Made by a program: the position numbers and the translations under genes
In this document: positions 3,214 to 42,704 of the stretch, in pieces
Layout: the number at the start of each line of letters is the position of its first letter
Position numbering within the stretch: the first letter of the stretch is position 1
IMG/VR virus record: IMGVR_UViG_3300034072_000758
Coordinates: 434,001 to 498,000 of that record
Reading direction: 5' to 3' (one strand)
DNA: 64,000 bases
The notes under the pieces: model-generated
Seen by the model: only the letters and a program-made list of their open reading frames with translations
What the model was told of the DNA's origin: nothing
Database searches by the model: none

Positions 3214-3392
3214 AATTTTGTGTGACGGCTGAAAACGATCAAGGTCTAACCTTTCAGGTTACATTCCATAATCCCAATTGGAATGGCGCAACGGCTGCTG
3301 CGCAGCGCGCCGTAAATAAGGCGGTGAAGGCCGATCCTTTCCATAAAAAGCATGGACCGTTCTTGGCCAAGAATATCGACGTGACAGCATGA
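3210..3392 (+). CDS. hypothetical protein
   Basis: ATGA-coupled operon ORF. Confidence 0.6.
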   Translation: MKFCVTAENDQGLTFQVTFHNPNWNGATAAAQRAVNKAVKADPFHKKHGPFLAKNIDVTA

Positions 3393-4159
3393 AGCGAATC
3401 AACCCCATAACCAATAGTGCGCAGGATAAGAGAGATTTTAAGATCAGAACGTTCTCTGATCTTAATCACTATCTCGACACGTTTTTGGGCGGGGAGATTG
3501 CGCGTTGTGCGAAGGCTACGGTCTTCTTCATGATTAATCGCATGTTGGATCAACCTGCCACCAAACCATTTAAACCCTTCACAATGGGTGATATTTTACG
3601 AGTGACCGGGGAAGACATCGATGTCGTGGTCCCTTCGACAAGCTGGCTTCAAAATCTCGACATTCTTGTGTTTGATCGGTCGATTGGTGACAATGATCCA
3701 ATCACCCTGAAATATAGCACTCTTTTTAAAGACTTATATCGAAATAACGATCTGGGCGCTGGGCCGAAACCAGTACCAACCCCACCTATTATCCCCCGGT
3801 TGTTGGCGGCAATTGATGGCACGGTTGACCACGAGCACAATGTCAGAGAAAAAGAAGATCGGGTATTTACTAAGACAATCCATCGTTTTCTTAATACCAA
3901 CAGACTTTTTCTTCAATACTCTCTGACCAAATGTGCCGGTAAAGAAGATAGTCATATATCCAATGATCGCAAACCAATGGTTGTTATTGAATTTATTCAT
4001 AGCTATGTTGGAATTATAGGACACACTTGGTTTACGGGCGCGGGCAAAGTATTAGCTCCCGAAACCAATGTTTATTACAAGGTTCGTCCCAAAAAAGGGT
4101 CTTCGCTCGAAGAGGCCGAAGAAGAACTTATGTTGCTGATGATGGAGGAAAGAATATGA
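3389..4159 (+). CDS. hypothetical protein with acidic-then-hydrophobic C-terminal motif
   Basis: 256 aa, ATGA-coupled; ends EEAEEELMLLMMEERI. Confidence 0.7.
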   Translation: MKRINPITNSAQDKRDFKIRTFSDLNHYLDTFLGGEIARCAKATVFFMINRMLDQPATKPFKPFTMGDILRVTGEDIDVVVPSTSWLQNLDILVFDRSIGDNDPITLKYSTLFKDLYRNNDLGAGPKPVPTPPIIPRLLAAIDGTVDHEHNVREKEDRVFTKTIHRFLNTNRLFLQYSLTKCAGKEDSHISNDRKPMVVIEFIHSYVGIIGHTWFTGAGKVLAPETNVYYKVRPKKGSSLEEAEEELMLLMMEERI

Positions 4160-4285
4160 AAATAGCTATGATTGTCGCGGCTATAGCTTTGTGCTATACC
4201 GGCAACAACACGACCAAAGAAACCACCGATCTTGAGAACGCGCAATGGGTTCAGGGTCTTATGAATATTTTGACTGCTGTGAAAT

Positions 4286-4984
4286 ATGAAACTCCGTCCG
4301 TTACGCGATGTGATTCTTGAAGGCTTAGGTGAGGCTTGGAAATATTATCCAAAGAACCTCGCCTTAAAGAAATGCTTTCAGATCATCGGTGAAATTGAAA
4401 GCTCCAAAAAGACGGGGTTCGATGACCTGTGCCAAGCCATACAATCTTTACCGGATGGCAGCATTAAAATTTCTCGTTGTCTCGACTATTACAAGACCGT
4501 AACTTTCGATCTTAACGCAGTAGAAAGCGGCGAGATCGATTTATATAGAGCTATGGTGGAAGATGACACTTGGCACTCTGTTTTTGATTTACACATGATT
4601 AAAAATCACGCCAGTATCATCCCAGCCCCATCGGTATCCAGAAAGCTGATTAATTTTGGGTATTGTCTTCATTGTTGTTTGAAGGCTACCACAACAAAAT
4701 ACGCAAGTATGTTATGTCGAGTTATAGAAGCGCTTTCGAACGAAAATTGGAAGATGTTTACTTACCATTGCCAACATGGCTATAACAACGGCATCCCGGC
4801 ATCAAGATCAATATTAAGCTGGCTGCGCTACGAGTATCAAGTAGGCCAGTATGGTCCCGATTACGATCTCTTAGCCGATGTTATAGCGATAATGGACCGG
4901 AACACTTCGTTGGCTATAGATAAATGGTTCGACCAATGCCTCATTGAGACGCGGGAGAGCGACCATAATGCAAGTGATAAATGA
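4286..4984 (+). CDS. hypothetical protein
   Basis: 232-aa ORF ending the + operon. Confidence 0.65.
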   Translation: MKLRPLRDVILEGLGEAWKYYPKNLALKKCFQIIGEIESSKKTGFDDLCQAIQSLPDGSIKISRCLDYYKTVTFDLNAVESGEIDLYRAMVEDDTWHSVFDLHMIKNHASIIPAPSVSRKLINFGYCLHCCLKATTTKYASMLCRVIEALSNENWKMFTYHCQHGYNNGIPASRSILSWLRYEYQVGQYGPDYDLLADVIAIMDRNTSLAIDKWFDQCLIETRESDHNASDK

Positions 4985-5390
4985 TCTCGTACTGCGGCGG
5001 CTCTATAAATTCTGGCTTAATAAAGACGGTGACGGCTTCATCAAAACTGGTTGATATGCTTTTCCGATTGACTGTTCGGAAAAGCATATAAGGATGAATC
5101 TTATTACCTTGGTCGATTTCGCGTTTCAACTCTGAGCGGATTTTGAGAATTGCGGTCGAATCATATAGATAATCCTGTCGTAACAAGATGCCATTTTCCA
5201 CGTCAAACCTGAACATTCTCGACATGGCTTGAACCGGGTCTTTGTGTCCAGCAAACATATTTACCGGGGCAGTCATAGGCTCATCAAACAAATCTTCTAG
5301 CTGATCAATAGGCATAATCTTGGCGCTGGAATATTGTAGCCTGAGATTTGCCATATTGATGTTTAATTTGTACGCGACGTATGAGGTCAT
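4941..5390 (-). CDS. hypothetical protein
   Basis: Start moved to MTSYV (5390), which gives an ATGA overlap with the upstream gene's stop. Confidence 0.6.
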   Translation of the reverse strand: MTSYVAYKLNINMANLRLQYSSAKIMPIDQLEDLFDEPMTAPVNMFAGHKDPVQAMSRMFRFDVENGILLRQDYLYDSTAILKIRSELKREIDQGNKIHPYMLFRTVNRKSISTSFDEAVTVFIKPEFIEPPQYEIIYHLHYGRSPASQ

Positions 5391-5608
5391 TGATAAGCAC
5401 CACTGGTAATGGACGCCAGAAGACGCATAACGGCCTCTGGATGCGTCTTCATTGCGTCGATGGGGCGAAGATACCCAAGGGCGCGTTTCTCGGTGTACGC
5501 CCATTCTTTAGCCCAAGAATCGATGTCGAAGTTCTTATGTTCGTCATCTTTGTCCGCATTTTCCCAGACCGCACGAGCTTGAGCTATGATTTGTTCAAGG
5601 TCAGTCAC
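5387..5608 (-). CDS. Xre/MbcA/ParS-type antitoxin C-terminal domain protein (DUF2384-like)
   Basis: W...EKRALGYLRPIDAMKT...VMRLLASITSGAYQ matches the family pattern W..P..ALG..RP.D...T......V..LL..I..G.Y. Confidence 0.7.
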   Translation of the reverse strand: MTDLEQIIAQARAVWENADKDDEHKNFDIDSWAKEWAYTEKRALGYLRPIDAMKTHPEAVMRLLASITSGAYQ

Positions 5609-5789: not shown

Positions 5790-5869
5790 ATCACGAGCAT
5801 ATCAAAGATAGTTAATAAATGGCAATTTTAAAATTGATTTATCGAGACCATATTTGATATATTTACTAC

Positions 5870-6249: not shown

Positions 6250-6325
6250 TCCTCGGTAGCTCAGTTGGTAGAGCGCCTGACTGTTAATCAGGATGTCACA
6301 GGTTCGAGTCCTGTCCGAGGAGCCA
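6250..6325 (+). tRNA. trnN: tRNA-Asn(GTT)
   Basis: TCCTCGG/CCGAGGA acceptor, CCTGA-CTGTTAA-TCAGG, GGTTCGAGTCC, encoded CCA. Confidence 0.95.
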
Positions 6326-6381
6326 TTAAAATTCGTGCGTTGTTTACCGCGTTGTAGCGGAGTAATAAATACGCACTATAT

Positions 6382-6453
6382 GGCCGATTAGCTCAGTGGT
6401 AGAGCGTCTCGTTTACACCGAGAATGTCGGGAGTTCGACCCTCTCATCGGCTA
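6382..6453 (+). tRNA. trnV: tRNA-Val(TAC), CCA not encoded
   Basis: GGCCGAT/ATCGGCT acceptor, TCTCG-TTTACAC-CGAGA; followed by CCATCC-TTCG-GATGG-TTTTCTT hairpin. Confidence 0.93.
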
Positions 6454-6538
6454 CCCATCCTTCGGATGGTTTTCTTTATATAAAAATAATTTTGCGGTTG
6501 CGAAATTATAAATAATGTATTAAGATGTCCTTAGATAT

Positions 6539-6610
6539 GCGGGTGTAACTCAGCGGTAGAGTGTCAGCCTTCCAAGCTGTTCGTCGCAGGTTCGATCCCT
6601 GTCACCCGCT
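6539..6610 (+). tRNA. trnG: tRNA-Gly(TCC), CCA not encoded
   Basis: GCGGGTG/CACCCGC acceptor, U73, TCAGC-CTTCCAA-GCTGT. Confidence 0.93.
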
Positions 6611-6629
6611 CTCTACAAAGGACATCAAG

Positions 6630-6872
6630 ATGAAACTCTTCCATTACACGAAAGAAGGCGAGCCAACCAAGGTTGGTTTCAATTTCTATCCGCCTAACGA
6701 TCCGAGTTCGATTGGCTTTAAGCTGATGTTCTCGCGCCGCCATCTGATCTATCTTCGTTGGTCTAAGATCAGAAAGAAGCTCCATTTCAACATCCGCTGG
6801 ATGTCTAAAGATCAATATGAGCATTCCCGCGCGCTCTATGAGATTTATAACACGCGGGTTGAGCGTCACTAA
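6630..6872 (+). CDS. hypothetical protein
   Basis: AAAGGA RBS then MKLFHY; the upstream in-frame part overlaps tRNA-Gly and is rejected. Confidence 0.65.
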   Translation: MKLFHYTKEGEPTKVGFNFYPPNDPSSIGFKLMFSRRHLIYLRWSKIRKKLHFNIRWMSKDQYEHSRALYEIYNTRVERH

Positions 6873-6900
6873 TCCGGGTCGTGGAACTACCGCCCTCTGA

Positions 6901-6926
6901 AAAAGCCTCCGCAAGGGGGCTTTTTT
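6901..6926 (+). terminator. intrinsic terminator
   Basis: AAAAGCCTCC-GCAA-GGGGGCTTTTTT. Confidence 0.85.
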
Positions 6927-6962
6927 ATTGCCTCAAAGTAATCATTCGTATAGTATTGAAAC

Positions 6963-7292
6963 ATGAGTATTACCGATAATATAAAACCATTTCTACCAGT
7001 AATTCACAATATGCTGGATAATAAACAAGAGACCTTTGATTTTCATATTCAACTAGAAAATACAGAAACGCTTGTGTCTATTAAAAACGAATGGGGTAAT
7101 ATGACTCGCAGTAGTGAGGAATTTACGATAATTGCTCACGGGTATTTTTGTTATACTTTGTTTATGGTCCCCGGACTTGATGGCGACAAAAAAGTATATC
7201 GATACGAAAAATCCCCCACGTTCTTTCTAAACGACCGCACCGAAGAAGACATGGAAGACGTGATTTTTGAAATAACCATGCGTCTTATGTAA
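6963..7292 (+). CDS. hypothetical protein, shared C-terminal motif
   Basis: AT-rich 109 aa, ends EDMEDVIFEITMRLM. Confidence 0.7.
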   Translation: MSITDNIKPFLPVIHNMLDNKQETFDFHIQLENTETLVSIKNEWGNMTRSSEEFTIIAHGYFCYTLFMVPGLDGDKKVYRYEKSPTFFLNDRTEEDMEDVIFEITMRLM

Positions 7293-7346
7293 CTTGACAC
7301 GATGTCAATATTAACATAATCTATCTTCTTCCATGAGGATGAATTT

Positions 7347-7718
7347 ATGATCGACGCAAAGATTTTCGAGCCTATGTTTAAGCGGGCTTGGGCGGAAATG
7401 GGTAAATCCCTCCCGGTCGTAATTCCATTCTACTATACCAGTAAGAGTGAACAAATCACGCTCAATCTTCATAGCTTTAGCATTGAGAATCGCGGCTTTG
7501 ACGAACCGTTTACTGGTTTTGTCACTATGGACATCAATCTGTCAAATAAAGCGCGCTTCGTGATCCTAGTAGAATTTGACGGAAGCTACACCCAACTAAA
7601 TGGGATTACCGTTCACCGGATCAATAAGCTTTCTCACAAGTACGGGTTTCCTCGCCTTCGTGCGAATAGCACTGATGTAGAAAATATTCTGGCGTATTTG
7701 ATAATGGCTGTATTCTAA
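7347..7718 (+). CDS. hypothetical protein, shared C-terminal motif
   Basis: 123 aa, GAGGA RBS, ends DVENILAYLIMAVF. Confidence 0.7.
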   Translation: MIDAKIFEPMFKRAWAEMGKSLPVVIPFYYTSKSEQITLNLHSFSIENRGFDEPFTGFVTMDINLSNKARFVILVEFDGSYTQLNGITVHRINKLSHKYGFPRLRANSTDVENILAYLIMAVF

Positions 7719-8080
7719 TGATCGACGCTCGTAATTTCGCCACCATGTTATACAGGATAACAGATGGCAATCCTTTAACCACAGATTTGGGGTACGTCCG
7801 GCTACACTATCGGATCGACGGTGAGGAAGATTTCATCATATTCGATATTACGGGTCATGCATATCATCCGGTCATAGAGGGACAGACTGGTGTTTCAGAA
7901 ACATTTATGACTATTCGACACCAACACTTCTATATGAAGGTTGGTGTTTGGTATAGCGAAGTTTCCAAATCCATTATAAGGGCATGGTACAGAAATGGGT
8001 GGGATAATAAAGCGGTGTATAAAATTTATAATCAAGAGGACGCTGAGAAGCATATAATGGCGGCTATGCTATATGTCTAG
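7718..8080 (+). CDS. hypothetical protein, shared C-terminal motif
   Basis: TAATG-coupled; same MIDA start as previous gene; ends EDAEKHIMAAMLYV. Confidence 0.7.
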   Translation: MIDARNFATMLYRITDGNPLTTDLGYVRLHYRIDGEEDFIIFDITGHAYHPVIEGQTGVSETFMTIRHQHFYMKVGVWYSEVSKSIIRAWYRNGWDNKAVYKIYNQEDAEKHIMAAMLYV

Positions 8081-8456
8081 CCAACCATTCGATAGCAATC
8101 CAGAGTATGTAAAGAATCTTCCTTGGGGGTGTATTGCGCGACTTTGCCAAAGTAATATTAAAAAGAGATTCTTAGAATTTAATGATCAAGATTTCGTTTT
8201 TTCTGTAGATGAACTCACCAATGGTGTGGATACTGCGAGGTATCATGTATTACTTTCTGAAATACAAATCGATCCTATATACGGAATATATCGTTATACA
8301 AAAAAGCTGTTCACCGCTTACGTTCATTTTGAGCGCGTGGAAAATCGCTTAATGGGTTCTAAACCACCTCTCTCTTTGTATATGCCCGTCGAGCTTTACG
8401 AGGACGACGCACCGTTAGTAGAAGAGGTGATTTTTATGATGGCATTATTATCCTGA
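8073..8456 (+). CDS. hypothetical protein, shared C-terminal motif
   Basis: 127 aa, ends LVEEVIFMMALLS. Confidence 0.7.
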   Translation: MSSQPFDSNPEYVKNLPWGCIARLCQSNIKKRFLEFNDQDFVFSVDELTNGVDTARYHVLLSEIQIDPIYGIYRYTKKLFTAYVHFERVENRLMGSKPPLSLYMPVELYEDDAPLVEEVIFMMALLS

Positions 8457-8520
8457 TAGGCAAAAAATAAGGACAATTAAGCACGGCTATTTAGGGGCTA
8501 TCCGGCTTCTAAATATTTTT

Positions 8521-9348
8521 ATGGCCTTCTTGAATTTAGATTTACGTCCAGTATCCAAGAAAATCGACTCCTTCGTCAGTTACGTTGATAAGCGTGTTGA
8601 CGAAATGGATTTATATACTCAGACCATGTTGTTCTGTGAACTGAGTTGCTTGGCGTACTTCTCTCATAACGAGGTTCAGGATTGGGCCAAAAAATTAAAT
8701 TTCCTGTCAGTAGTCGCTATCGAGAATGATGGTGGGTTGGCATATCTGTTCGAAACGGAAACCGATCTGATCTTGTCGTTCCGTGGGAGTGATAATGCTC
8801 AGAATCGTAAAACCAACTTCGACCTCGATCTAGTGAAGGATGGAGCTTTAGCCGGTAAAGTTCACCACGGTTTCTTGAAGCTGGCAGACAAGATGATCAA
8901 CAGCTTTGTAACGCTGCTGGATGCTAATAATTGTGAAAAGAAGGTTTGGGTAACAGGACATTCTCTGGGAGGCGCAATAGCTGCGATCATGGCCGTGAAA
9001 GCCGAGCGTCGAGTCGGACCTAATGTTGATGGTATCGTGACTTTCGGCCAACCTAAGATAGGCAATCATGCCTATATCAAGGGAATTACTACCCCGTATT
9101 ATCGTTGGGTAAACCACGAAGACATCGTATCGAAGCTTCCGATGTGGTTACCTCATTTTGGTTCATTAAAATATCTTAACAACAAAGGTGATCTGAGCAT
9201 TCAGACTTTTATTTCCACTTTGTTTATATTCCCTTCTACCCAATCGATAGAAGATCATGACATCGTGAAATATCGCGCTGTTCTGGAAAAACAAAAGGGG
9301 AAGGAACTTAATCCCTCCCCTATGACATTCTTCAAACTTATTAAGTAA
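8521..9348 (+). CDS. class 3 lipase / phospholipase (alpha/beta hydrolase)
   Basis: LSFRGS, GKVHHGF, VWVTGHSLGG, TFGQPKIGN, VNHEDIVSKLP, C-terminal DH; TAAATA 5 nt before ATG. Confidence 0.9.
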   Translation: MAFLNLDLRPVSKKIDSFVSYVDKRVDEMDLYTQTMLFCELSCLAYFSHNEVQDWAKKLNFLSVVAIENDGGLAYLFETETDLILSFRGSDNAQNRKTNFDLDLVKDGALAGKVHHGFLKLADKMINSFVTLLDANNCEKKVWVTGHSLGGAIAAIMAVKAERRVGPNVDGIVTFGQPKIGNHAYIKGITTPYYRWVNHEDIVSKLPMWLPHFGSLKYLNNKGDLSIQTFISTLFIFPSTQSIEDHDIVKYRAVLEKQKGKELNPSPMTFFKLIK

Positions 9349-10011
9349 TTAGAACGAAGCAGTCAGCGACAGGACGGTATGGTCCGGTTCGATTTGGGTG
9401 TTGGTGTCATGGTAACGAACGTCAACCGACAGGCGGTCATTCAGCTTGTACGAGACACCGATGTTGCCAGTGTTGTAGGACGACTGCTGGAACGATTGTT
9501 CTCCGAGCGCGCCCGAAACAGTCAGACGATTTGTCAACGGGTACGAAGCATTGACCTCATAGTAGAAAGCCTTGCCAGTCTCACCGAAGAACTGTGGCGA
9601 GTAATAAACGGCTGCGCCGACATTGGCCTTACCAACCGGACGCGAAACGCCAGCCTTGATTTCGCCATAAGCGTAATCGGAACCCTTCGGCTGATCAGGA
9701 TAGCCGGTGTAAATCACGGCGAAATCGAATGTGTATTCCTTGTAGGAAGGGCGGACACCCGCATACAGATTGATTTCAGCATCCGTGCTGTTATTGAAAT
9801 CCACGTTGGACGCAAAAGCGCCGACATATACAGTGTTGTCGAAGGTGTGTTCGACACGGGCTTGAACAGCTTCATGTTGATCGGTTTGGCTGACACCACG
9901 ATCCACATAATCCGAGGCGACGGTTACTGCGTAATTGGTGTCACCAGCCGAAGCCGTTGCCGCCGATACTAAACCGAGAGCGGCGATTGTTGCTGCGATA
10001 AGCACTTTCAT
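9349..10011 (-). CDS. TorF-family putative outer-membrane porin (TIGR02001-like)
   Basis: Signal peptide, VASDYVDRGVSQT motif, alternating beta-strands, C-terminal Phe. Confidence 0.85.
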   Translation of the reverse strand: MKVLIAATIAALGLVSAATASAGDTNYAVTVASDYVDRGVSQTDQHEAVQARVEHTFDNTVYVGAFASNVDFNNSTDAEINLYAGVRPSYKEYTFDFAVIYTGYPDQPKGSDYAYGEIKAGVSRPVGKANVGAAVYYSPQFFGETGKAFYYEVNASYPLTNRLTVSGALGEQSFQQSSYNTGNIGVSYKLNDRLSVDVRYHDTNTQIEPDHTVLSLTASF

Positions 10012-13486: not shown

Positions 13487-14077
13487 ATGACTTTAATTCC
13501 AAAAAATGTTCTCATGGGAAAATCCCCGGAGAATGTCGTACTGAACAAAGCTCGCCAAGATAAAACATTAGCGACAATCGTTGATAGTCTGGCATCAATG
13601 ACCTTACAGGACATTGATGCTTTGTCGTATATGAAATATATCAAAGATGGCCTGAAAAAAATAAAGACCAATATGGTGGATGCCCCAGCATCATTTACAA
13701 CATATGATATGATCGAAGCATTTGTTTCTTGGAGCACCGTTCCCGATGTTTTAGGCCACTGCTATACCTATTTGGGAGACACCACCTTTGTTCCAGTTGG
13801 TAATGGTCGCACTTCTTTGGAAATAAAATACGGCGATTTGTTCTTCTGTCCGTTCGAGGGTGGTATCTGGATCGATACCATTTTCTCTGAAAAAATACCC
13901 AGCTTGGCCAAGAAAGACGATGGCGTCGTGGCGTTTATGGAATACAAAAAGCGCGTCCGAGATCGTATGAATGAATCTGTAAATGGGTCCGGCGTTATTT
14001 TTGACAGTCATTCAGACAAAAGGGGCGACACCATAAGCATCGCCCCAAATATCAATTTCACTATACAACGCTTTTAG
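13487..14077 (+). CDS. hypothetical protein (late)
   Basis: 196 aa; TAAATA 4 nt before ATG. Confidence 0.7.
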   Translation: MTLIPKNVLMGKSPENVVLNKARQDKTLATIVDSLASMTLQDIDALSYMKYIKDGLKKIKTNMVDAPASFTTYDMIEAFVSWSTVPDVLGHCYTYLGDTTFVPVGNGRTSLEIKYGDLFFCPFEGGIWIDTIFSEKIPSLAKKDDGVVAFMEYKKRVRDRMNESVNGSGVIFDSHSDKRGDTISIAPNINFTIQRF

Positions 14078-23820: not shown

Positions 23821-23848
23821 AAAAAGGGGCCGAAAGGCCCTTTTTTCA
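23818..23848. terminator. bidirectional intrinsic terminator
   Basis: AAAAAAGGGGCC-GAAA-GGCCCTTTTTT between convergent genes. Confidence 0.85.
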
Positions 23849-24211
23849 TAATGATAATAATAGTGTGATCAGAAAATCATCAATTTCGGTCTCTTCACCA
23901 GTAACATACATTTTATAGCTGGTGACAATATCTCTACCGTATGGTGGATGATATTTGAATGTTGGATCAAACCGAATAACGAATTTATCAGTCTCAAATT
24001 CAGTTATAGCGTGATAAATATCTCTATCAGGGTTGACCATATTATCGGCTATCGAGAATAGAAAATTTATATCCCTGTGAATTACCCAAAGATAAAATAT
24101 ATTATCTTTGGGTAATGTGGTTGCGATTTTACCGAGCACCATTTGCTCCCACACGGTCCTATACAGCGTGTGGCACTTTTCAGCATCATCGAATGTTTTG
24201 GTTATAATCAT
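23846..24211 (-). CDS. hypothetical protein, shared C-terminal motif
   Basis: AT-rich 121 aa, ends EETEIDDFLITLLLSL. Confidence 0.65.
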   Translation of the reverse strand: MIITKTFDDAEKCHTLYRTVWEQMVLGKIATTLPKDNIFYLWVIHRDINFLFSIADNMVNPDRDIYHAITEFETDKFVIRFDPTFKYHPPYGRDIVTSYKMYVTGEETEIDDFLITLLLSL

Positions 24212-30738: not shown

Positions 30739-31269
30739 ATGGGTACTCGTCATTTGGTGGTTGTTCGCTTGAACAATGAAGTAAAAGTCGCTCAGTATGG
30801 TCAATTCGACGGTTATATGAGCGGGGCTGGTAGAACAATACAACGTATTTTGTCGTTTGCTGATTTGAATTTGCTAAAAGAGTTAGTAGCAAAATGTTGG
30901 TGGATCACAGATGATGAACACAACAAGATGATGGCTGATCTTGGTGTCAAAAGTAATGACGGTTGGATTAGCTTGGATGACAGTAAAAAAATTGAAAAAG
31001 CTTATCCGCATCTTCATCGCAATTGTAGCGCCGAAGTCATCACTGAAATTCTCAACAGCGAAAACGGATTACCGCTTCAAAATTCATACGATTTTGGAGA
31101 AGATGGACTTTTTTGCGAATACACCTATACGGTCGATCTCGACAATGATACATTGACCGCACAAAGCGGGGGTTTGGACGGCAAAGTCCTTTTCCAAGGA
31201 CCAATCAACACGCTCCACACAATCCCACCATTTGAAGACCCCAAAGACGAAGAAGAAGACGAAGAATGA
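30739..31269 (+). CDS. conserved phage hypothetical protein (MGTR family)
   Basis: MGTRH...[12 protein letters not shown] and LFCEY.Y.VDLD motifs. Confidence 0.7.
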
Positions 31270-33047
31270 CCAAGACAAACATGCGAACGCAAACCTGTGG
31301 TGAATTGACCGTGGCCTATACTGGCGACACGGTGAGCCTGTGTGGCTGGATTCACCGCAAGCGAGATCATGGCGGCTTGCTGTTCATCGACTTACGTGAC
31401 AATTACGGACTGACCCAGATCGTAATGCAAAAGACCGCTGCCTGTTTCTCGGTGGTGGAGCACCTTCGCCAAGAAAGCGTAATTCGCGTAATCGGTAAGG
31501 TCGTAACGAGAACGGAAAATACACAAAACCCGAACCTCGCAACCGGGCAGATCGAAGTCATCGCTTCGGAAATTACAGTTCTGTCGGAAGCCTCGGAACT
31601 TCCAGTGCCAGTGTTCGGTGATGTTCAGTATCCAGAAGACCAACGTTTGAAGCATCGCTATCTCGATCTTCGCCGTGACGAACTCCACTCAAACATCCTG
31701 CTGCGCTCCAAGATCATTAGCTACCTGCGTAGGTTCATGGAGGGCGAAGGCTTTACTGAGTTTCAGACGCCTATTCTGACCGCATCTTCCCCAGAAGGCG
31801 CGCGCGACTTCCTCATTCCATCACGCCTTCATCCCGGCAAATTTTATGCCCTGCCTCAAGCACCACAACAATTCAAGCAACTTTTGATGGTGTCTGGCTT
31901 TGACCGCTATTTCCAGATCGCACCTTGCTTCCGCGACGAAGCCGCCCGTGCTGACCGGTCGCCGGGTGAGTTCTATCAACTCGATATTGAAATGTCTTTC
32001 GTCAATCAGGAAGACGTTTTCTCTCAGGCTGAACGTATCCTTCATTCGACCTTTACTGAGTTCTCGAACGGGAAGACCGTAAGTTCGTACCCATTCCAGC
32101 GAATCACCTACAAGGACTCGATGGAAAAATACGGCAACGATAAGCCCGATCTTCGTAACCCAATCGTCATGAGCGATGCTTCGCTTTATTTCGTGAACGG
32201 CGGCTTCGGTCTGTTTGAGAAAATGGCCAGCGACGGCAAAAGCTCGATCTGGGCTATTCCGGTCAAGGGCAATGGAAACATCAATCGCAAATTCTGCGAC
32301 AAGATGAACTCTTGGGCCATCGAAGAAGGCCAAAAAGGTATGGGATATATCTATTGGAACGAAGAAGGCGCACAAGGCCCAATCGCCAAGAATCTCCATG
32401 CCGATAAGCTGGGACAATTGGAAGCCGCCTATGAATTGGGTAACGGTGATGCCATATTCTTCGTGGCCGGGATCAAAAAGGATTTCCTCAAGTTCTGCGG
32501 ATTCGCCCGCACCAAGATCGCCGAAGAACTCGGTCTGATCAAGGATGATCATTTCCATTTCTGCTGGGTGGTGGATTTCCCAATGTTCGAACTATCGAAC
32601 GAAGGCAAAATCGATTTCGCCCACAATCCGTTCTCTATGCCACAAGGCGAAATGGAAGCTCTGGAAACCAAGAACCCGCTGGATATTCTGGCCTATCAGT
32701 ACGACATCGTGTGTAACGGCATCGAACTGTCCTCCGGGGCTATTCGTAACCACCGACCCGACATCATGCTCAAGGCTTTTGAAATCGCTGGTTACAAGGC
32801 CGAGGAAGTGGAAGAACGCTTCGGCGGTATGTTGAACGCATTCCGCTATGGCGCGCCTCCCCACGGTGGTCTGGCTCCCGGTGTTGACCGCATGGTCATG
32901 ATGCTGGCTAATAAATCCTCCATCCGAGACATCATCGCTTTCCCGCTGAATCAGCAAGGACAAGATTTGATGATGAACGCACCATCGGAAGTCACGGATA
33001 AACAACTCAAAGAGTTGAACATCCGAACATACAAGCCATTGAGCTAA
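31266..33047 (+). CDS. aspS: aspartyl-tRNA synthetase, probably non-discriminating
   Basis: [55 protein letters not shown]; His in RDHGG is the ND-type residue. Confidence 0.97.
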
Positions 33048-33478: not shown

Positions 33479-34705
33479 TTACAGCCACACTTTCCCATAT
33501 GCTGATTGAAGAATAGACGGGATGAACACTTTACCACCTTCGTCCTGATAGTTTTCCAGAACAGCCAACAAAGTTCTACCAACCGCCAGTCCAGACCCAT
33601 TTAAGGTGTGGACTGGTTCTTTTTTGCCTTGAGCATTGGTGAAGCGAGTCTTCATGCGATTGGCTTGGAAATCGCCACAATTGGATACCGAGCTAATCTC
33701 ACGATAAGTTTTCTGTGATGGCACCCAAACTTCGATGTCGTAAGTCTTTTGTGCTCCGAAGCCCATGTCACCCGCGCATAATAACATGATGCGATATTTT
33801 ATACCCAATGAAGTGAGGATGTTTTCAGCACAAGATAACATGAACTCGTGCTCTTGTGCCGACTTCTCAGGCGTAGTGATCGACACCATTTCAACTTTGT
33901 TAAATTGATGCTGGCGTAAGATGCCATGCGTGTCCTTACCAGCGCTTCCGGCTTCGGATCGGAAACATGGGGTCAGCGCAGTTAGACGAAGGGGTAATTC
34001 ACCCTCAGCCAAAATCTTATCAGCGACATAATTTGTCAAAGTCACTTCGGCGGTCGGGATCAGAAAATGTTCATCAGTGTTCACCGAGTACAGGTCATCG
34101 ATGAATTTAGGAAGCTGACCAGTTCCATACAAGGCCGTGTCTTTCACCAGCAACGGAGTGGAGCATTCCTCGAATCCATTTTTAACCTGACATTCAAGCA
34201 TATACTGCCCGATAACTCGTTCGAGACGTGCCACGGGGCCGCGCATGAATGAGAAGCGTGTGCCAGACATCGCTACCCCCGCTGATATATCGAGGCCGTA
34301 TTTGCTCCCGATCTCAACATGGTCTTTCGGGTCTTTTATGGAACGGAGCGGAATATCATTGACACGAACCAATTGATTGTCGTGCTCGTCTTTTCCAACC
34401 GGAACGTCATTGGCTGGGACATTTGGGATGTCGAACAAATAGTCTTCAAGTTCCCCGGCCAGATAATCGACCAAGCCTTCGGCAGTAGTTATTTCGGCCT
34501 TCACCGCCACCCCGGTTTCATGGTCTTTATTCCGCGCGGCATCCTTGCGCTTGGCGTACAAAGCCTCAAGATCAGTCAACGATTTACGATGATCTGTATC
34601 CTTTTTGAGAATGTCCGAAACTATCCGAGACCCGTCAAGCCCTCTCTTATTCAACCCGCTGGCAACGGCTTCTGGATTCTCGCGGATGGTCTTTATATTG
34701 ATCAT
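33479..34705 (-). CDS. serS: seryl-tRNA synthetase
   Basis: N-terminal coiled arm, LIPTAEV.LTN, FRSEAGSAGKDT.GILRQHQFNKVE, YREISS.SNC.DFQA.R, TLNGSGLAVGRT. Confidence 0.97.
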   Translation of the reverse strand: MINIKTIRENPEAVASGLNKRGLDGSRIVSDILKKDTDHRKSLTDLEALYAKRKDAARNKDHETGVAVKAEITTAEGLVDYLAGELEDYLFDIPNVPANDVPVGKDEHDNQLVRVNDIPLRSIKDPKDHVEIGSKYGLDISAGVAMSGTRFSFMRGPVARLERVIGQYMLECQVKNGFEECSTPLLVKDTALYGTGQLPKFIDDLYSVNTDEHFLIPTAEVTLTNYVADKILAEGELPLRLTALTPCFRSEAGSAGKDTHGILRQHQFNKVEMVSITTPEKSAQEHEFMLSCAENILTSLGIKYRIMLLCAGDMGFGAQKTYDIEVWVPSQKTYREISSVSNCGDFQANRMKTRFTNAQGKKEPVHTLNGSGLAVGRTLLAVLENYQDEGGKVFIPSILQSAYGKVWL

Positions 34706-37377: not shown

Positions 37378-37439
37378 CTTGACAGCAAGAAAATATATTG
37401 CTAGATTGAAACCCTCATTTTATTTTGGGGGTATAAATC

Positions 37440-37631: not shown

Positions 37632-37933
37632 TGGACAAGACACAAGTTGCGCTGGGGATCGTGCGCGAGGCTCATTCGCTGTCTCCCGAAGAGTTCCAAA
37701 ATCGCTATCCGCCGAAGACTGATCGGATGTATGATCCGAACGACCCCTTCTACATGACTTCGACGGATTATTTGAACCAATATAATCCCAACCGTCTCCA
37801 TTGTGCGGATGGCGGCGCTTGTCACCACGCTTGCGCTTCGAACGAGGCCGGGGCCTGTTTCCGACGTGATACTTGCGGGCCGCTCAGTAATAGTGGCTGG
37901 GAAATGAAAGACGGAAAGTGGGTACAAGAATGA
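37631..37933 (+). CDS. small Cys/His-rich hypothetical protein
   Basis: C-x5-C-H-H-x-C...C-x4-C-x-P possible metal-binding cluster. Confidence 0.6.
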   Translation: MDKTQVALGIVREAHSLSPEEFQNRYPPKTDRMYDPNDPFYMTSTDYLNQYNPNRLHCADGGACHHACASNEAGACFRRDTCGPLSNSGWEMKDGKWVQE

Positions 37934-38934
37934 CCATCGTTCATAAACTTCAAGAGCACGGACTAATCAGTCCGCCGAAATGGTTGCCGGATAACCTCGC
38001 GTATCTGGTCATCATGGGATCGATGGCTTACGGCGTCAATACGGACACGTCCGATATGGATGTGTATGGCTTTGCTGTGCCTCCCAAGGAGATCGTATTT
38101 CCACACCTGACCGGCTATATCCCCGGCTTTGGTAACCACCCGGAAAAGTTCGATCAGTGGTCCGAGCATCACATCAGACAGAACCAGAAGGAATACGACT
38201 TCTCGGTCTATTCCATCGTGCGATATTTCGATCTGTGTAGGGAAAACAACCCCAACATGATTGATAGCCTTTTCGTGCCGGACAACTGCGTGATGTTCCA
38301 ATCCAAAGTCGGTGAGATCGTCCGCGAGAACAAACACGCCTTCCTTCACAAGGGGGCTTTCCACAAATACAAAGGCTATGCTTACGCGCAAATCGGGCGT
38401 TACAAGTCTCTGTCCCCGGAGAGCAAGCTTGGCTCCATCCGTATCAAGATGGGTGAAGAAGGTTTGGAGTTCGATGCCTTCAAAGAAAAGGTGGATAGTG
38501 GGGAGCTTGTTCTATCAGCTTCGATGAAGCGTGATTTCGACGGCCTGAACGAACGCCAAATCAACACCATCAAGGAAGGTGTGGATCGCAAGGCTATGTA
38601 TCACGTGGTTCGTTTGATGAACGAGCTTGAGCAAATCCTGACAACAGGGACGCTTGATCTCCAAATCAATCGGGAACAGCTTAAGTCTATTCGTCGTGGC
38701 GAGTGGACACCTGAGCAAATCTTTGAATACTTCGAGCGCAAGGAAGCCGAACTCGACGGCATCCAATTGACCTCGAACGTGCTTCCACATGGCCCTAACA
38801 TGAAACAGCTTCACAGCATTCTGGTAAGCTGTCTGGAAGAGGTTTATGGGTCTCTGGACAACATGATCTCCCAGAATAAAGATGATCGATTACTGGTCGA
38901 ATTGAAAGGTCTCGTGAAAAAGTTCGACGTATAG
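37930..38934 (+). CDS. Pol beta-superfamily nucleotidyltransferase (YcgL/RlaP-like)
   Basis: GSMAYG.NTDTSD.D motif, NPNMID.LF, K.MYH.VRL, L.SIRRGE. Confidence 0.85.
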   Translation: MTIVHKLQEHGLISPPKWLPDNLAYLVIMGSMAYGVNTDTSDMDVYGFAVPPKEIVFPHLTGYIPGFGNHPEKFDQWSEHHIRQNQKEYDFSVYSIVRYFDLCRENNPNMIDSLFVPDNCVMFQSKVGEIVRENKHAFLHKGAFHKYKGYAYAQIGRYKSLSPESKLGSIRIKMGEEGLEFDAFKEKVDSGELVLSASMKRDFDGLNERQINTIKEGVDRKAMYHVVRLMNELEQILTTGTLDLQINREQLKSIRRGEWTPEQIFEYFERKEAELDGIQLTSNVLPHGPNMKQLHSILVSCLEEVYGSLDNMISQNKDDRLLVELKGLVKKFDV

Positions 38935-39378: not shown

Positions 39379-40567
39379 AATAATTTGCTAATATGTTTCT
39401 ATAATATTTTAAATACAAGTTCGAGTTTCCCGAAACGTTATTCATAGTTACAATAATATCCAGATTGTCTATGTAAAACCTCACAAATTCGGTAGCATCA
39501 ATTGGTAATGTGACATCACTTAACATGCTTATGGAACGAAGTGCCGAGTCATAATAATAAATCTCGTGTGGCGCACTAGGAGAACTTGAATTTTTCATAT
39601 TTGTTATGATCAAATATTTGTTAGTTCGATTTGATATTTTATGTATATGGCTGTTCCCATTACTTATTATGCTTCTGGTATAATTGTTTATATTGCCCTG
39701 TAACGAACTCGTCTCATCGGTTACAACGGACGTAGAGGGGTTATAAGAAAAATAGGAAAATTGAGGATGCGTTACGCTGCTTGAACCATGATGTAGCAAC
39801 AATTCATTGTTGGCCGGGGATAACATCGCGCGAGACGCAAGGTTACCAGATACAAAGGTATATGGGCTTGTGTATGTTTGTTCATACGTGATGCCGGTAG
39901 ACGTATTGAACTTGAAGAAATATAAATAGCTTCCATTCATATTCCACATCACAAAAGTGTCGTCATTAATCCATTCTACTTCACACACCGCACCAAATGA
40001 GCTATAACCCGGAATACCGGTAGGCACAGTAATAGTAAAATTAGAAGCCGGGGTCAAAACCGTTACATATACCGTTCCACTAAGAACACTCGCCGTAGCC
40101 GCCCAATCATTTGTTTTATGCCAACCATTTGCGGTAGTCGTACTCGCAGCCGAGGTAGCATGGTAAATAGAGCGTGATGTCGATGTAGAGGCAAATGGAA
40201 ATGTTGTTAACACATCAGAACCACTTACAGTTGTCTGTGGATAACCACCAAAAACCGAGGGTTTATGAAGCGCTCTCGTAAAAGTAAAAGGACCACTACT
40301 ATAAAAACCTGATGAATTTGCGGTATCTTTCACATACAAATCGGTCCCGGTATTCAACATAATAGCATATCTTATACCAGACACATAATAGCCGCTCGAA
40401 GCAGTGGTTGTATCTTTTCCGTATGAATACAGGCCATTTACCATTGGTGCTGTACTTGGGTGTACTTTACCATTAAAGCTTACAAAATACGGGGTGTGAT
40501 CAAACCTCGTACTTGAGGTCTGAGCGGGCGATGTACTTTTTCCTTCAACCAAATAATGATACAGCAT
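39377..40567 (-). CDS. AT-rich Ser/Thr/Tyr-rich virion accessory protein (possible receptor-binding)
   Basis: TAATG-coupled to the collagen fibre; beta-rich composition. Confidence 0.6.
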   Translation of the reverse strand: MLYHYLVEGKSTSPAQTSSTRFDHTPYFVSFNGKVHPSTAPMVNGLYSYGKDTTTASSGYYVSGIRYAIMLNTGTDLYVKDTANSSGFYSSGPFTFTRALHKPSVFGGYPQTTVSGSDVLTTFPFASTSTSRSIYHATSAASTTTANGWHKTNDWAATASVLSGTVYVTVLTPASNFTITVPTGIPGYSSFGAVCEVEWINDDTFVMWNMNGSYLYFFKFNTSTGITYEQTYTSPYTFVSGNLASRAMLSPANNELLLHHGSSSVTHPQFSYFSYNPSTSVVTDETSSLQGNINNYTRSIISNGNSHIHKISNRTNKYLIITNMKNSSSPSAPHEIYYYDSALRSISMLSDVTLPIDATEFVRFYIDNLDIIVTMNNVSGNSNLYLKYYRNILANY

Positions 40568-41847
40568 TATGAGAAGTTCTTCCCGATCTGGGTTAGAAGA
40601 TACGTTAAACCGCCGTCATATGTAAATACAGTGTAAACATCTACCGCACCATTCGACGTGGATTGTGTATACGTAACATTCTGGGGGGTTCTGGCCGATG
40701 CTGGCCATGTTACCGAAAATGCTCCGCCCCCCTGCCGCACCGCAACAATCGCAGTATATGTTCTGGATGTCGAAACCGCATTCGTGAAGGCAAAACTTGT
40801 AGCCCCGGTTAAGGTAATATTATAAAAATAGTTAGCACCTAGATCGAGCGTAACAGTTCCAGACGCACTAGCAACCACCGCAACATTTTCATAAGTTGGC
40901 CCCATCGGACCTTGAATACCTTGAATGCCCTGAACACCTTGAATACCTTGAACACCTTGAATACCCTGAGCACCAGTATTACCTATAGGGCCTTGTATAC
41001 CTTGTATACCTTGCGGACCTTGTGGTCCTTGCTCACCTCTAACATACCCAGCGTTCCCAATCGATCCATTGGAATATAGAATATTAAGCCAGCCGGTAAT
41101 CGCGTTGGCCGAAACAATACCATTACCATATGGACCTGCTGGTCCGGTCGCGCCTTGGTTACCCTGTGGCCCCTGTGGGCCGATCACCGAACCAGCATCA
41201 ATCGTCGCTCCCGTTGAGAGAGTCAGAATAAGGCGTCCTGAGCCATTGACCACTGCTGCTGTAACACTGGTCCCACTTGGACCCACCACGGCACCGGCAT
41301 TGATCACGGTTCCAGACGTAAGCGTCAGATAAAGTTGACCGTTCGTAACTGTAGCAGACTGTACACCAACACCATTGGTCCCAGAAGCCCCATCTAAGCC
41401 CTTTACGTAGCCAGCATTGATCGTGAGGCCGTTGGACATATTAATGAAGAGATCGCCGCTCTGAGCTACGTATGCGCCTTGTACGCCTACACCGTTTTCA
41501 CCCACAACATCACCCACGTCGATGACCGTGTTATCAGTCAAAGTGAAAATCAGATTTTGGTTCAGAATTTGCGCGTTGGAAACGCCGACGCCTTGCGGAC
41601 CAGCCTCGCCAGTAGGAACGATCCCGGCATCAATGACTGAGTTATCGGTCATGAGCATCAGAAGATGATTCTCACCGTTTACGTACTCAACGTATACGTT
41701 GGCAACACCCACCCCACGCGGGCCTTCTGGCCCCATAACAACAGGGATTTTATCGACCACGGCATTAGGTATTATCGTGTCGTTTGTATTGTTGAACATA
41801 ACTGGTGGAGTACCACCGGGAAGACGGGCATTGATAATATCTGGCAT
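40567..41847 (-). CDS. collagen-like tail fibre protein
   Basis: (GXY)n tracts, several GVGVxxAxVxxGxL.LTLS.G..I.AG.V.G repeats, C-terminal TLDL.....NITLTG...F.FTN domain; late promoter. Confidence 0.85.
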
Positions 41848-41872
41848 ACAGATATTTATTCAACAACATGAC

Positions 41873-41900
41873 TTGACAAAATATCAGGCTATGCTATCTT
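41873..41900 (+). promoter_or_regulatory. sigma70-type promoter of a non-coding transcript
   Basis: TTGACA-16 nt-TATCTT with extended TG; no credible ORF before the terminator at 42340. Confidence 0.7.
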
Positions 41901-41906
41901 ATACTT

Positions 41907-42373
41907 GTCCCTCCGCTATTGGGTCGTGTGAACATTCTAGGTAAGTAACACGTTCTCATACAGGCTCGCGGTTAAGTCTATGGGTGATCTGAGTGGCCTA
42001 AGATGTATGTGGTTCGATTCCACTATGGGATACCAATTCGCTCAAATGAGCAAACGAATTGTTGTTTAAAGGGTGTATGGAGGCACGTTCTGTCCGAGTG
42101 GGGACAGAAAGGCGGGGGTTCGAATCCCCGTTGTCCGAATCAGGTGGTGTTTTCGAGGGAGACCTTGGAAATGTGGGTTCGAGTCCCACAGAGACAGAAC
42201 AACAGACCAACGGCGAGAGTTGCGTATCTATAAGTTCAGGCCCGAAAGGGATAGAGTGAAGCTGAGGATGCCGCGAAGGAAGTAAGCGCGGATTCGATGA
42301 CGCTGAAACGAATATTACACCCTGACGCTCTCAATGATTAGGCCCTCGGACATACCATCCGAGGGCCTTTTTT
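41907..42373 (+). ncRNA. unidentified structured ncRNA (~460 nt) with a tRNA-like 5' module and two further T-loop hairpins
   Basis: T-loops at 42013, 42119, 42178; CCA at 42033-35; helices 42070-77/42316-23 and 42087-94/42193-200; GNRA hairpins; terminator 42340..42373. Confidence 0.7.
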
Positions 42374-42704
42374 ATATGTATAGCAACACGTCCATTAAAA
42401 GATTATCTATACATTCCACCGAGGGCTTGTCCGTGTGCGGGAAATTAGTGTACATCAAACGATTATCATTGAACGTAAATTCATACTTATATTCTTGAAT
42501 ACCATTATTTCTAAGCTTATACGTGATGTCATCAATAAAAATCTCCCAAATAAAAACCGAATCAATTTTGTCTATTTCAATACGTTTATACTTATGTCCA
42601 TAGCCCTCACGACATTGCGTCCATTTACCCAAGCTCTCTATTTGCTTAAAAGCATTTTCAAGAGACCTGAGTAAATGTCGTTGTTCCTGCGGTGTGTAAA
42701 TCAT
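42372..42704 (-). CDS. hypothetical protein, shared C-terminal motif
   Basis: Start MIYTPQ gives an ATGA overlap with the K+ channel stop; ends ECIDNLLMDVLLYI. Confidence 0.6.
   Translation of the reverse strand: MIYTPQEQRHLLRSLENAFKQIESLGKWTQCREGYGHKYKRIEIDKIDSVFIWEIFIDDITYKLRNNGIQEYKYEFTFNDNRLMYTNFPHTDKPSVECIDNLLMDVLLYI

What the first reader, a model, noticed from the sequence alone, without database searches (positions are those of the whole stretch)
3389..42704. Dispersed AT-rich small proteins sharing an acidic-then-hydrophobic C-terminal signature
Seen: otherwise dissimilar ORFs end alike: EEAEEELMLLMMEERI (3389), EDMEDVIFEITMRLM (6963), DVENILAYLIMAVF (7347), EDAEKHIMAAMLYV (7718), LVEEVIFMMALLS (8073), EIDDFLITLLLSL (23846), ECIDNLLMDVLLYI (42372). 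Four are tandem and two share an MIDA start. Inference: a common C-terminal docking or targeting helix, such as an adaptor-binding, packaging or membrane-delivery tag, that delivers diverse effectors to one partner.
Basis: partly seen in the sequence, partly recalled or inferred. Interest (0 to 1): 0.62.

Follow-up and report, generated by a model that had tools for sequence, protein, structure and literature searches.

The report
Giant phage gene family sharing a tail helix
The look-alike protein ends are real: they mark about 115-130 small, fast-diverging genes (roughly one gene in six) of a 517-kb bacteriophage that share little detectable besides a C-terminal helix, which would be an unusually large gene-family expansion for a phage; its function is unknown.

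Summary
Observation confirmed, and far larger than reported. The window lies in a complete 516,805-bp huge phage distantly related to Agrobacterium phage Atu_ph07. All seven ORFs and tails exist as described. Genome-wide, a position matrix of the tail scores at least 4 bits at the C-terminus of 117 of 695 genes, against about 1 expected. The motif is almost never internal.

The consensus is [S/T/D]-x-E-E-h-[DE]-[DE]-x-L-M-x-L-x-L, with two or three more residues before the stop. Conservation sits in codon positions 1 and 2 only, so selection acts on the protein. The proteins are not fully dissimilar:
- sizes are narrow (median 129 aa);
- a strand and turn run straight into the helix, with no linker;
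- a quarter share an N-terminal hW..hh helix;
- most sit in translationally coupled tandem arrays.

No member matches Pfam, PHROGs or any outside protein among 1.84 billion cluster representatives. The nearest huge phage has about 70 genes with the same design but its own dialect (A-V-x-F-K-L-x-W).

Best reading: one hyper-expanded paralogous family of small alpha/beta proteins whose terminal helix is a conserved handle, possibly a docking surface. I found no evidence for packaging or membrane delivery, and no partner.

The parts
3389..4159 (+). Family member, 256 aa (long form). Tail matrix score 26.3 bits.
   Evidence: ORF; score; no Pfam or PHROGs family.
6900..6929 (+). G+C-rich hairpin followed by a T run (terminator-like), just upstream of the four-gene tandem.
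   Evidence: Read directly from the sequence. It was not listed by the consensus scan.
6963..7292 (+). Family member, 109 aa, first gene of the tandem. Tail score 8.2 bits; 35.8% GC.
7347..7718 (+). Family member, 123 aa, MIDA start with a GAGGA ribosome-binding site 9 nt upstream. Tail score 16.6 bits.
   Evidence: The ESM Atlas model has low confidence.
7718..8080 (+). Family member, 120 aa, MIDA start. Its ATG overlaps the previous TAA by one base. Tail score 14.6 bits.
   Evidence: AF2 model: pLDDT 56, helix - strands - helix - strand - helix. A word search of 5.8 billion proteins found only itself.
8073..8456 (+). Probable divergent member, 127 aa. Its start overlaps the previous gene by 8 nt. 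Tail score below 3 bits.
   Evidence: Membership rests on its position in the operon, its size and the look of its tail, not on the matrix.
8488..8515 (+). Terminator-like hairpin plus T run that closes the four-gene unit.
23846..24211 (-). Solitary family member, 121 aa. Tail score 26.4 bits; 35.2% GC.
23827..23840 (-). Terminator-like hairpin directly after the stop of the 23846 gene.
42372..42704 (-). Family member, 110 aa if started at the ATG at 42704, which overlaps the TGA of the upstream K+ channel gene (ATGA). Tail score 20.3 bits.
   Evidence: The longer 183-aa ORF (to 42923) overlaps the channel gene in another frame.

Best explanation
The shared ends are the C-terminal alpha-helix of one very large, genome-specific paralogous family of small alpha/beta proteins, typically 100-150 aa. 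The family has at least 115 genes, about 17% of this 517-kb phage's genes.

Shown:
- The family grew mostly as translationally coupled tandem arrays in the accessory region at 150-250 kb, with outliers such as the seven in this window.
- The bodies have diverged beyond ordinary sequence detection.
- What is kept is an acid-capped, broadly hydrophobic terminal helix fed directly by a beta-strand and turn. A quarter of members also keep an N-terminal hW..hh helix.

Inferred:
- The two terminal helices lie together on one face of an antiparallel sheet and form a constant handle.
- The sheet and loops are the variable, target-binding part.
- Specific side chains of the tail (Leu-Met in this phage, Phe-Lys-Leu..Trp in its relative) are held constant while everything else drifts. 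The handle is therefore probably also the contact to one common partner.
- The family then acts as a repertoire of binders used in host takeover or counter-defence.
For: Enrichment and strict C-terminal placement.

Protein-level selection: information sits in codon positions 1-2 only.

Strand - turn - N-cap - helix with no linker: alternating Y/V/L/I at -14 to -7, G/S/T/D at -6/-5, E at -3/-2.

Shared N-terminal motif at a fixed position: p = 5e-9. A subfamily alignment has an invariant Trp and a central hairpin.

Narrow sizes. Arrays with 26 of 33 neighbouring pairs overlapping, 17 of them by 4 nt.

Two AF2 models of different members give the same order of elements: helix, 4-5 strands, then (with an extra helix in one model) a short strand and the terminal helix. 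The tail helix is one of the best-scored parts. The weak best structural neighbours are all 'sheet backed by terminal helices' domains: KA1, Aha1/START-like and p32/MAM33, with Z 4.8-5.0.

Weak excess similarity between bodies with the tails removed: 56 against 22 hits at E < 0.1.

Genome-specific dialects with the same hydrophobic spacing and the same distance to the stop. G001 has 67-72 of 712 genes with its own tail, and the matrices hardly cross-detect.

No orthologues of the 115 small members in G001 or Atu_ph07, against 26% for other genes.
Against: - Homology of the bodies is not demonstrated. No pair reaches E < 1e-3 outside the tail with standard filters; with filters off a few pairs reach about 1e-3. 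Iterated profiles do not grow.
- The excess of weak hits is under threefold (about 1.8-fold at E < 1, 2.5-fold at E < 0.1) and could partly reflect shared composition.
- Both structure models are of low confidence (pLDDT 56 and 62), and no fold match exceeds Z 5.
- That the two helices pack together is inferred from those models, not shown.
- No partner, expression timing or host is known. The sigma-70-type promoter scan was not above shuffles.
- The binder-repertoire function is inference by analogy only.
Confidence: 0.6

Rival explanations
1. One reading: a portable C-terminal docking or targeting helix attached to unrelated effectors. It would deliver them to one partner such as an adaptor, the capsid interior, a secretion route or a membrane.
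For: - Bodies show no significant pairwise similarity.
- The motif is essentially only at the extreme C-terminus: 98 C-terminal against 8 internal hits at 8 bits or more.
- Side-chain identity is kept in a genome-specific dialect, as expected for co-evolution with one partner.
Against: - There is no linker; a strand and turn run into the helix.
- Sizes are narrow.
- A second shared motif sits at the N-terminus, and one subfamily aligns through the middle.
- Tandem coupled arrays fit duplication.
- The tail is never found on a recognisable domain. None of the 51 members scanned reaches a Pfam cut-off, and only 2 of 117 hits are proteins with homologues elsewhere.
- An acidic helix is a poor membrane anchor (general knowledge).
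- No partner was found.
Confidence: 0.25
2. The tail is a self-association element: tails of the same or different family members bundle into homo- or hetero-oligomers. This would also explain a genome-wide dialect.
For: - The C-terminal half of the helix has a broad hydrophobic face of roughly 200 degrees (positions +3, +4, +6, +8, from the profile).
- The dialect is uniform within each genome.
- Members are co-transcribed and translationally coupled.
Against: There is no direct evidence. The single homodimer prediction gave no answer and counts neither way. The weak fold neighbours include p32/MAM33, which I recall from general knowledge to be a trimer, but at Z 5 this means little.
Confidence: 0.1
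3. The similarity is chance, a composition effect, or the translation of a conserved DNA or RNA element at gene 3' ends (terminator, promoter of the next gene, recombination site).
For: - The genes are AT-richer than the rest.
- Terminator-like hairpins follow some of them.
Against: - Observed counts are 40-100 times the shuffled or internal expectation.
- Nucleotide information is near 2 bits at first and second codon positions and 0.02-0.37 bits at third positions. Leu positions use CTN and TTR codons alike.
- The terminator-like hairpins lie after the stop codons.
Confidence: 0.02
4. The tail is a C-terminal degradation tag (ssrA-like or a non-polar C-degron) that makes these proteins short-lived.
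For: - Extreme C-terminal position.
- Non-polar endings such as -LAAS, -LTL and -LSL in many members.
Against: - The last two or three residues are the least conserved part. The conserved part is the upstream helix with its acidic cap.
- The sister dialect ends in Trp/Phe plus one variable residue. This is unlike LAA-type tags as I recall them; I did not test it.
Confidence: 0.03

Closest known systems
Lineage-specific paralogue expansions in jumbo phages, for example the ~35-copy zinc-ribbon family of Bacillus phage G (review PMC7824862)
   Same: One small-protein family multiplied many times within a single very large phage genome and absent from relatives.
   Different: - About 115-130 copies here, three to four times the case that the review calls 'unprecedented'.
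- No recognisable domain.
- Members are recognisable almost only by a terminal helix.
- A related phage carries a parallel expansion with its own dialect of the motif.
Multigene families of large eukaryotic DNA viruses (poxvirus Bcl-2-like proteins, ASFV MGF families, herpesvirus US22/SUKH proteins) - from general knowledge
   Same: Tandemly duplicated, fast-evolving small proteins whose relatedness is seen mainly in fold or short motifs. They are used against host defences.
   Different: - Bacterial virus.
- No sequence link: the SMI1_KNR4 model finds nothing in this genome, and Pfam shows no consistent hit in 51 members.
- Function here is untested.
Terminal targeting helices: T4 capsid-targeting sequence, encapsulin and microcompartment cargo peptides, Dot/Icm E-block signal (general knowledge)
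   Same: A short terminal, partly acidic and partly hydrophobic helix shared by many otherwise different proteins.
   Different: - Those tags sit on proteins of many unrelated folds and sizes, usually behind a flexible linker. The T4 tag is N-terminal and cleaved.
- Here the helix follows a strand and turn without a linker.
- Carriers are uniform in size and never carry known domains.
Domains with an antiparallel sheet backed by N- and C-terminal helices (KA1, p32/MAM33, Aha1/START-like)
   Same: Same order of secondary-structure elements in both models. These are the top, though weak, structural neighbours: Z 4.8 with rmsd 3.4 Å over 77 residues, and Z 5.0 with rmsd 3.4 Å over 87 residues.
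   Different: Z of 5 or less from models with pLDDT 56-62 is within the range of chance arrangements. There is no sequence relationship, so I make no membership claim.

Membership tests
Any curated protein family (Pfam-A, PHROGs v4) | A profile match at or above the family threshold | tested here: not met
   - The seven window proteins: best E = 0.055 in Pfam and 0.07 in PHROGs, all far under the cut-offs.
- 51 members scanned singly: 18 different families, each hit by one member only, best E = 0.0045.
- Ten G001 members: nothing.
SUKH / SMI1_KNR4 immunity-protein superfamily | A match to PF09346, or consistent weak matches across members | tested here: not met
   The six-frame HMM search of the whole phage genome found nothing at E <= 1, while the control genomes matched. 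It is absent from the tallies. Profile-profile comparison was not done.
Portable C-terminal targeting tag (encapsulin or microcompartment cargo peptide type) | The tag is joined to cargo of diverse folds and sizes through a flexible linker | tested here: not met
   Strand-like alternation at -14 to -7 and a one- or two-residue turn lead directly into the helix. Carrier sizes have a 25th-75th percentile of 117-151 aa. No carrier has a known domain.
Portable C-terminal targeting tag | The tag alone is enough for delivery to, or binding of, a defined partner | not testable with these tools
   This needs fusions, pull-downs and virion proteomics.
T4-type capsid targeting sequence | An N-terminal helix removed by the prohead protease | tested here: not met
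   The conserved signature is C-terminal. The N-terminal hW..hh motif is present in only 25% of members. No cleavage motif was examined, and the definition of the T4 tag is from memory.
ssrA-like / non-polar C-degron | Conserved identity of the last 2-3 residues (LAA-like) | tested here: not met
   The last position holds S9, A8, L8, I6, V4 and K4 among 46 tails. Conservation lies at +3 to +8 of the helix and in the acidic cap. The G001 tails end with W/F plus a variable residue.
Dot/Icm E-block secretion signal | The carrier is encoded by a bacterium that has a type IVB secretion system | tested here: not met
   The record is a complete phage genome with direct terminal repeats and T4-like and virion genes. 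Secretion-system genes were not searched for specifically.
Lineage-specific paralogous expansion (one family by descent) | Detectable homology between members outside the shared motif | tested here: inconclusive
   - No pair reaches E < 1e-3 without tails under standard filters; with filters off a few pairs reach about 1e-3. Iterated profiles do not grow.
- Weak hits are 1.8-2.5 times more frequent than in controls.
- The N-terminal motif is enriched, and a 16-member subfamily aligns along its length.
Lineage-specific paralogous expansion | Tandem arrangement and a uniform gene size | tested here: met
   81 of 117 members lie at 150-250 kb. 26 of 33 adjacent same-strand pairs overlap. The median size is 129 aa.
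KA1 / p32-MAM33 / START-like folds | A structural match clearly above background (Z of about 8 or more) from a confident model | tested here: inconclusive
   Best Z values are 4.8 and 5.0, from models of pLDDT 62 and 56. BFVD gave no hit at E <= 0.001.

The most novel reading that the evidence does not exclude
Two related huge phages each encode a repertoire of about 70 to 130 hyper-variable small proteins built on one scaffold. A genome-specific terminal helix plugs every member into a single common hub, either a phage- or host-encoded partner or the tails of the other members. This would be a modular 'binder library' that lets the phage engage many host or defence targets through one shared effector route.
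Probability: 0.15. Interest if true: 0.85.

Novelty: new variant of a known kind. Interest (0 to 1): 0.7.

Why it matters
Roughly one gene in six of a half-megabase phage belongs to a single family that standard annotation cannot see. There is no Pfam or PHROGs match, no relatives among 1.84 billion cluster representatives, and members do not detect each other. This helps explain part of the 'dark matter' of huge phage genomes and how such genomes inflate.

The scale is three to four times the expansion that a recent jumbo-phage survey called unprecedented. The contrast between a frozen terminal helix and free-running bodies, repeated with a different dialect in a sister phage, gives a concrete experimental handle. 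The tail peptide can be used as bait, swapped between dialects, or deleted. Such experiments would test whether huge phages run a common-handle, variable-head binder system in host takeover.

Tried and rejected
- Pairwise blastp and phmmer among the seven seeds and against all ORFs gave no significant similarity.
- All-against-all phmmer of 92 tail-less members gave no links at E < 0.01. Jackhmmer-like iteration from seven seeds, and from the 16-member alignment, did not grow.
- An HMM of the tail alone is too short for useful E-values, so I replaced it with a position matrix and empirical nulls.
- Word-index searches of 5.8 billion proteins with a window member and with an L001 member returned only the queries themselves.
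- A profile of A2 against 1.84 billion representatives returned only G000's own members.
- A profile of A2 against PDB sequences returned nothing at E <= 10.
- blastn of the 1773-aa gene against phage records found no match.
- A profile of A1 against the sister genome G001 found no match. The sister family was found only through its own tail motif.
- The ESM Atlas look-up gave a low-confidence model with NTF2-like neighbours at TM 0.55. I treat this as a lead only.
- Two AF2 runs had pLDDT 56 and 62. Fold searches found nothing above Z 5 or E 0.1.
- The homodimer prediction for one member gave 'no answer' and counts neither for nor against binding.
- The sigma-70-type promoter scan around the window members was not above shuffles. 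K-mer enrichment upstream of array leaders gave no clear shared promoter.
- A full-text search for tail words such as FKLRW found nothing relevant.
- Laying contigs from other runs showed the same phage at 99% identity or more, with only 3 SNPs. That is too little variation to compare selection on tail and body.
- The SUKH idea, recalled from memory, found no HMM support.


Full report
WHAT THE WINDOW IS. The 64-kb window is bases 434,001-498,000 of a single 516,805-bp virus record. The record has direct terminal repeats, is rated complete, and has 45% GC.

It carries T4-like replication genes and virion genes:
- a gp32-like SSB, UvsX, ribonucleotide reductase, virion proteins and a 1773-aa fibre-like protein;
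- three aminoacyl-tRNA synthetases and 18 tRNAs in the window alone.

A virion protein (27841-28896) gives the closest relatives:
- a 13.5-kb IMG/VR contig, L001, at 54% identity;
- a 523,836-bp IMG/VR phage, G001, at 52%;
- Sinorhizobium phage Phosso and Agrobacterium phage Atu_ph07, at 44%.

Near-identical DNA occurs in subsurface, soil and other runs from five studies. It is therefore a real, circulating huge phage of the Atu_ph07 group whose host is unknown.

THE OBSERVATION.
- The four at 6963-8456 form one unit. A terminator-like hairpin precedes it at 6900-6929 and another follows at 8488-8515.
- Within the unit, 7718 starts on the last base of the previous TAA and 8073 overlaps by 8 nt.
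- The 42372 ORF is best read from the ATG at 42704, which overlaps the TGA of an upstream K+ channel gene.
- None of the seven matches Pfam or PHROGs. They do not match each other or any other ORF of the genome by blastp or phmmer.

IS IT MORE THAN CHANCE? I called genes over the whole genome with a simple codon-usage score, giving 682 genes and 86% coding. I then ran three tests of increasing specificity.
1. Internal windows predict 2.5 and shuffles 4.7, with a maximum of 11.
2. The hits share an obvious consensus. A 9-residue regex placed within 6 residues of the stop hits 64 of 682, against 1.4-1.6 expected. Of the 119 matches anywhere in the proteome, 49 lie exactly 2-3 residues from the stop.
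3. A 17-column matrix, leave-one-out for its training tails, scores at least 4 bits at 117 of 695 gene ends against about 1 expected. Fifteen more hits fall among ORFs my caller had rejected.

At 8 bits or more there are 98 C-terminal hits and only 8 internal ones in the whole proteome. Two of the 117 are large conserved proteins and are probably false positives. The family therefore has about 115-130 genes, 17-18% of the genome. Of the 117, 81 lie between 150 and 250 kb, so the window holds outliers. The regex and matrix were built after seeing the data. The positional specificity and the leave-one-out scores do not depend on that.

ANATOMY OF THE TAIL. I anchored the profile on the acidic pair. 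It reads as follows:
- alternating Y/V/L/I at -14 to -7, which looks like a strand;
- G/S/T/D at -6/-5, a turn and helix N-cap;
- E/D at -3/-2;
- a hydrophobic residue at -1;
- D/E at 0 and +1;
- Leu at +3, Met or Ile at +4, Leu at +6 and Leu at +8;
- two or three poorly conserved residues, then the stop.

There is no Gly/Pro/Ser-rich linker. At the DNA level almost all the information sits in codon positions 1 and 2; third positions carry 0.02-0.37 bits. The Leu columns use all six codons. Selection is therefore on the peptide, not on a terminator, promoter or recombination site.

ARE THE CARRIERS OTHERWISE DISSIMILAR? Only partly.

For dissimilarity:
- With tails removed, no pair reaches E < 0.01 under standard filters; with filters off a few reach about 1e-3.
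- Iterated profiles do not grow.

Against dissimilarity:
- Sizes are narrow: median 129 aa, 25th-75th percentile 117-151, against 109-260 for other genes.
- An N-terminal hW..hh helix with Trp at residue 10-12 occurs in 28 of 114 members and 17 of 373 other small proteins (p = 5e-9). The two MIDA starts are a variant of this N-terminal helix, and a third MIDA gene sits at genome position 212,274.
- Sixteen Trp-type members align along their whole length, with an invariant Trp and a central h-x-h-x-x-P-x-x-F hairpin.
- Tail-less bodies hit each other about twice as often as they hit size-matched non-members: 422 against 233 at E < 1, and 56 against 22 at E < 0.1. This is a modest signal that shared composition could partly explain.
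- 26 of 33 adjacent same-strand pairs overlap, 17 of them by 4 nt, as expected for tandem duplicates kept in operons.
- The tail is never found on a recognisable domain.

Two AF2 models of different members are of low confidence (pLDDT 56 and 62). The tail helix is one of the best-scored segments. The weak best structural neighbours are all sheets backed by terminal helices: KA1, Aha1/START-like and p32/MAM33, with Z 4.8-5.0. That is an arrangement, not a fold assignment.

DISTRIBUTION. The family is invisible outside this genome.
- Word searches return only the query.
- A profile of the 16-member subfamily against 1.84 billion cluster representatives returns only those same G000 proteins.
- None of the 115 small members has a homologue in G001 or Atu_ph07 at E < 1e-5, against 26% of the other genes.

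Yet G001 has its own version. A matrix built from its tails, h-x-[IF]-[ED]-D-[DE]-x-[DL]-A-V-x-F-K-L-x-[WF]-x-stop, marks 67-72 of its 712 genes against fewer than 1 expected. These genes are again small and mostly in arrays. L001 has five such genes in 13.5 kb. The two dialects share several features:
- the same hydrophobic spacing (h h x h x h x h);
- the same acidic cap;
- the same preceding strand;
- the same distance to the stop.

Many G001 members also have an N-terminal helix ending in E-W-L. Each matrix nevertheless finds almost nothing in the other genome. Atu_ph07 has only a handful of weak look-alikes among 770 genes, and 78 more distant loci have none.

INTERPRETATION. The data fit one hyper-expanded, hyper-divergent family better than a tag pasted onto unrelated effectors. 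The tail is an integral strand-turn-helix ending of a small alpha/beta domain.

A helix that merely packs on a freely varying sheet should keep its periodicity but not Met at +4, or Lys and Trp in the sister dialect. Holding particular side chains fixed across more than 100 otherwise unrecognisable paralogues, in a genome-specific form, suggests contact with something invariant. That could be the family's own N-terminal helix, the tails of other members, or one common partner.

I therefore rank the readings as follows:
- a constant handle on a variable binder scaffold, probably doubling as a docking surface: 0.6;
- a truly portable tag: 0.25;
- tail-tail oligomerisation: 0.1;
- a degron, or a chance or DNA-level artefact: 0.05 or less together.

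The family's setting resembles viral multigene families used against hosts:
- an AT-richer composition;
- location in an accessory region interspersed with aaRS, Tpt1/KptA and nucleotidyltransferase genes;
- complete lack of orthologues in relatives.

That function is inference only.

KNOWN OR NEW. A survey of 224 jumbo phages singles out a ~35-copy zinc-ribbon family in phage G as an 'unprecedented lineage-specific expansion' (PMC7824862). I found no description of this family or motif. It is therefore a new family, and an unusually extreme example of a known kind of phenomenon.

LIMITS.
- The gene calls are my own.
- The motif definitions were made after seeing the data.
- Structure models are of low confidence.
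- The single complex prediction gave no answer.
- Host, expression and partner are unknown.
- Phosso was not scanned.

Noticed in passing
window 42701-43102 (-): A 133-aa two-transmembrane K+ channel (Pfam Ion_trans_2, E = 1e-14, TVGYGD filter) encoded by the phage. Its TGA overlaps the ATG of family member 42372-42704 (ATGA coupling).
   Followed up: partly
window 911-2284 (-), 31266-33047 (+), 33479-34705 (-); genome 154232-155752 and 175361-176593: Several aminoacyl-tRNA synthetase genes: CysRS-, AspRS- and SerRS-like in the window, plus a class I and a class II enzyme inside the family arrays. Together with 18 tRNAs in the window, this is a large phage-encoded translation kit.
   Followed up: partly
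window 43414-45406 (-): A block of 14 tRNA genes with multiple Lys, Leu and Arg isoacceptors. Four more lie at 639-714 and 6250-6611.
   Followed up: no
window 6561-6872 (+): A 103-aa ORF starts inside tRNA-Gly (6539-6611). It is probably not a gene, although my caller kept it with a low score.
   Followed up: no
window 6925-6962 and 7293-7346: Upstream of 6963 and 7347 lie TTGCCT-15 nt-TATAGT and TTGACA-15 nt-CATAAT. Both are promoter-like but have a 15-nt spacer, so the 16-18-nt scan did not list them. A shared short-spacer early promoter is possible.
   Followed up: no
G001 (IMGVR_UViG_3300037418_001546), e.g. 199-205 kb and 369-375 kb; L001: The sister huge phage has about 70 small genes ending in its own dialect (D-D-x-x-A-V-x-F-K-L-x-W). 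The 13.5-kb contig L001 has five. Neither matches Pfam or PHROGs.
   Followed up: yes
genome 174510-174914, 214744-215109, 192991-193338, 171218-171679; window 7718-8080: The protein versions stored in the public collections start downstream of the first ATG and cut off the conserved N-terminal helix in several members. The deposited gene calls are probably too short.
   Followed up: partly
window 22063-23820, 24355-25710, 29328-30605, 8521-9348, 9349-10011, 37918-38934: Auxiliary genes: glutamine-dependent NAD synthase, an SPFH/Band-7 protein, an M16 peptidase, a class-3 lipase, a Gcw_chp porin-like outer-membrane protein and an RlaP nucleotidyltransferase.
   Followed up: no
window 40567-41847 (-), 14074-14997 (-), 16442-21763 (-), 15589-16302 (-): A collagen-repeat fibre protein, other fibre-like proteins including a 1773-aa one, and a GIY-YIG (LEM-3-like) nuclease gene lying between structural genes. 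The nuclease may be a homing endonuclease.
   Followed up: no
window 6900-8500 in public runs: The same phage at 99% identity or more is present in contigs of runs from five studies (subsurface, soil, lake water, wastewater, and two with coded organism names). Only three SNPs were seen. One changes the hydrophobic residue at -1 of the 8073 tail from Val to Ala, which the motif allows.
   Followed up: partly
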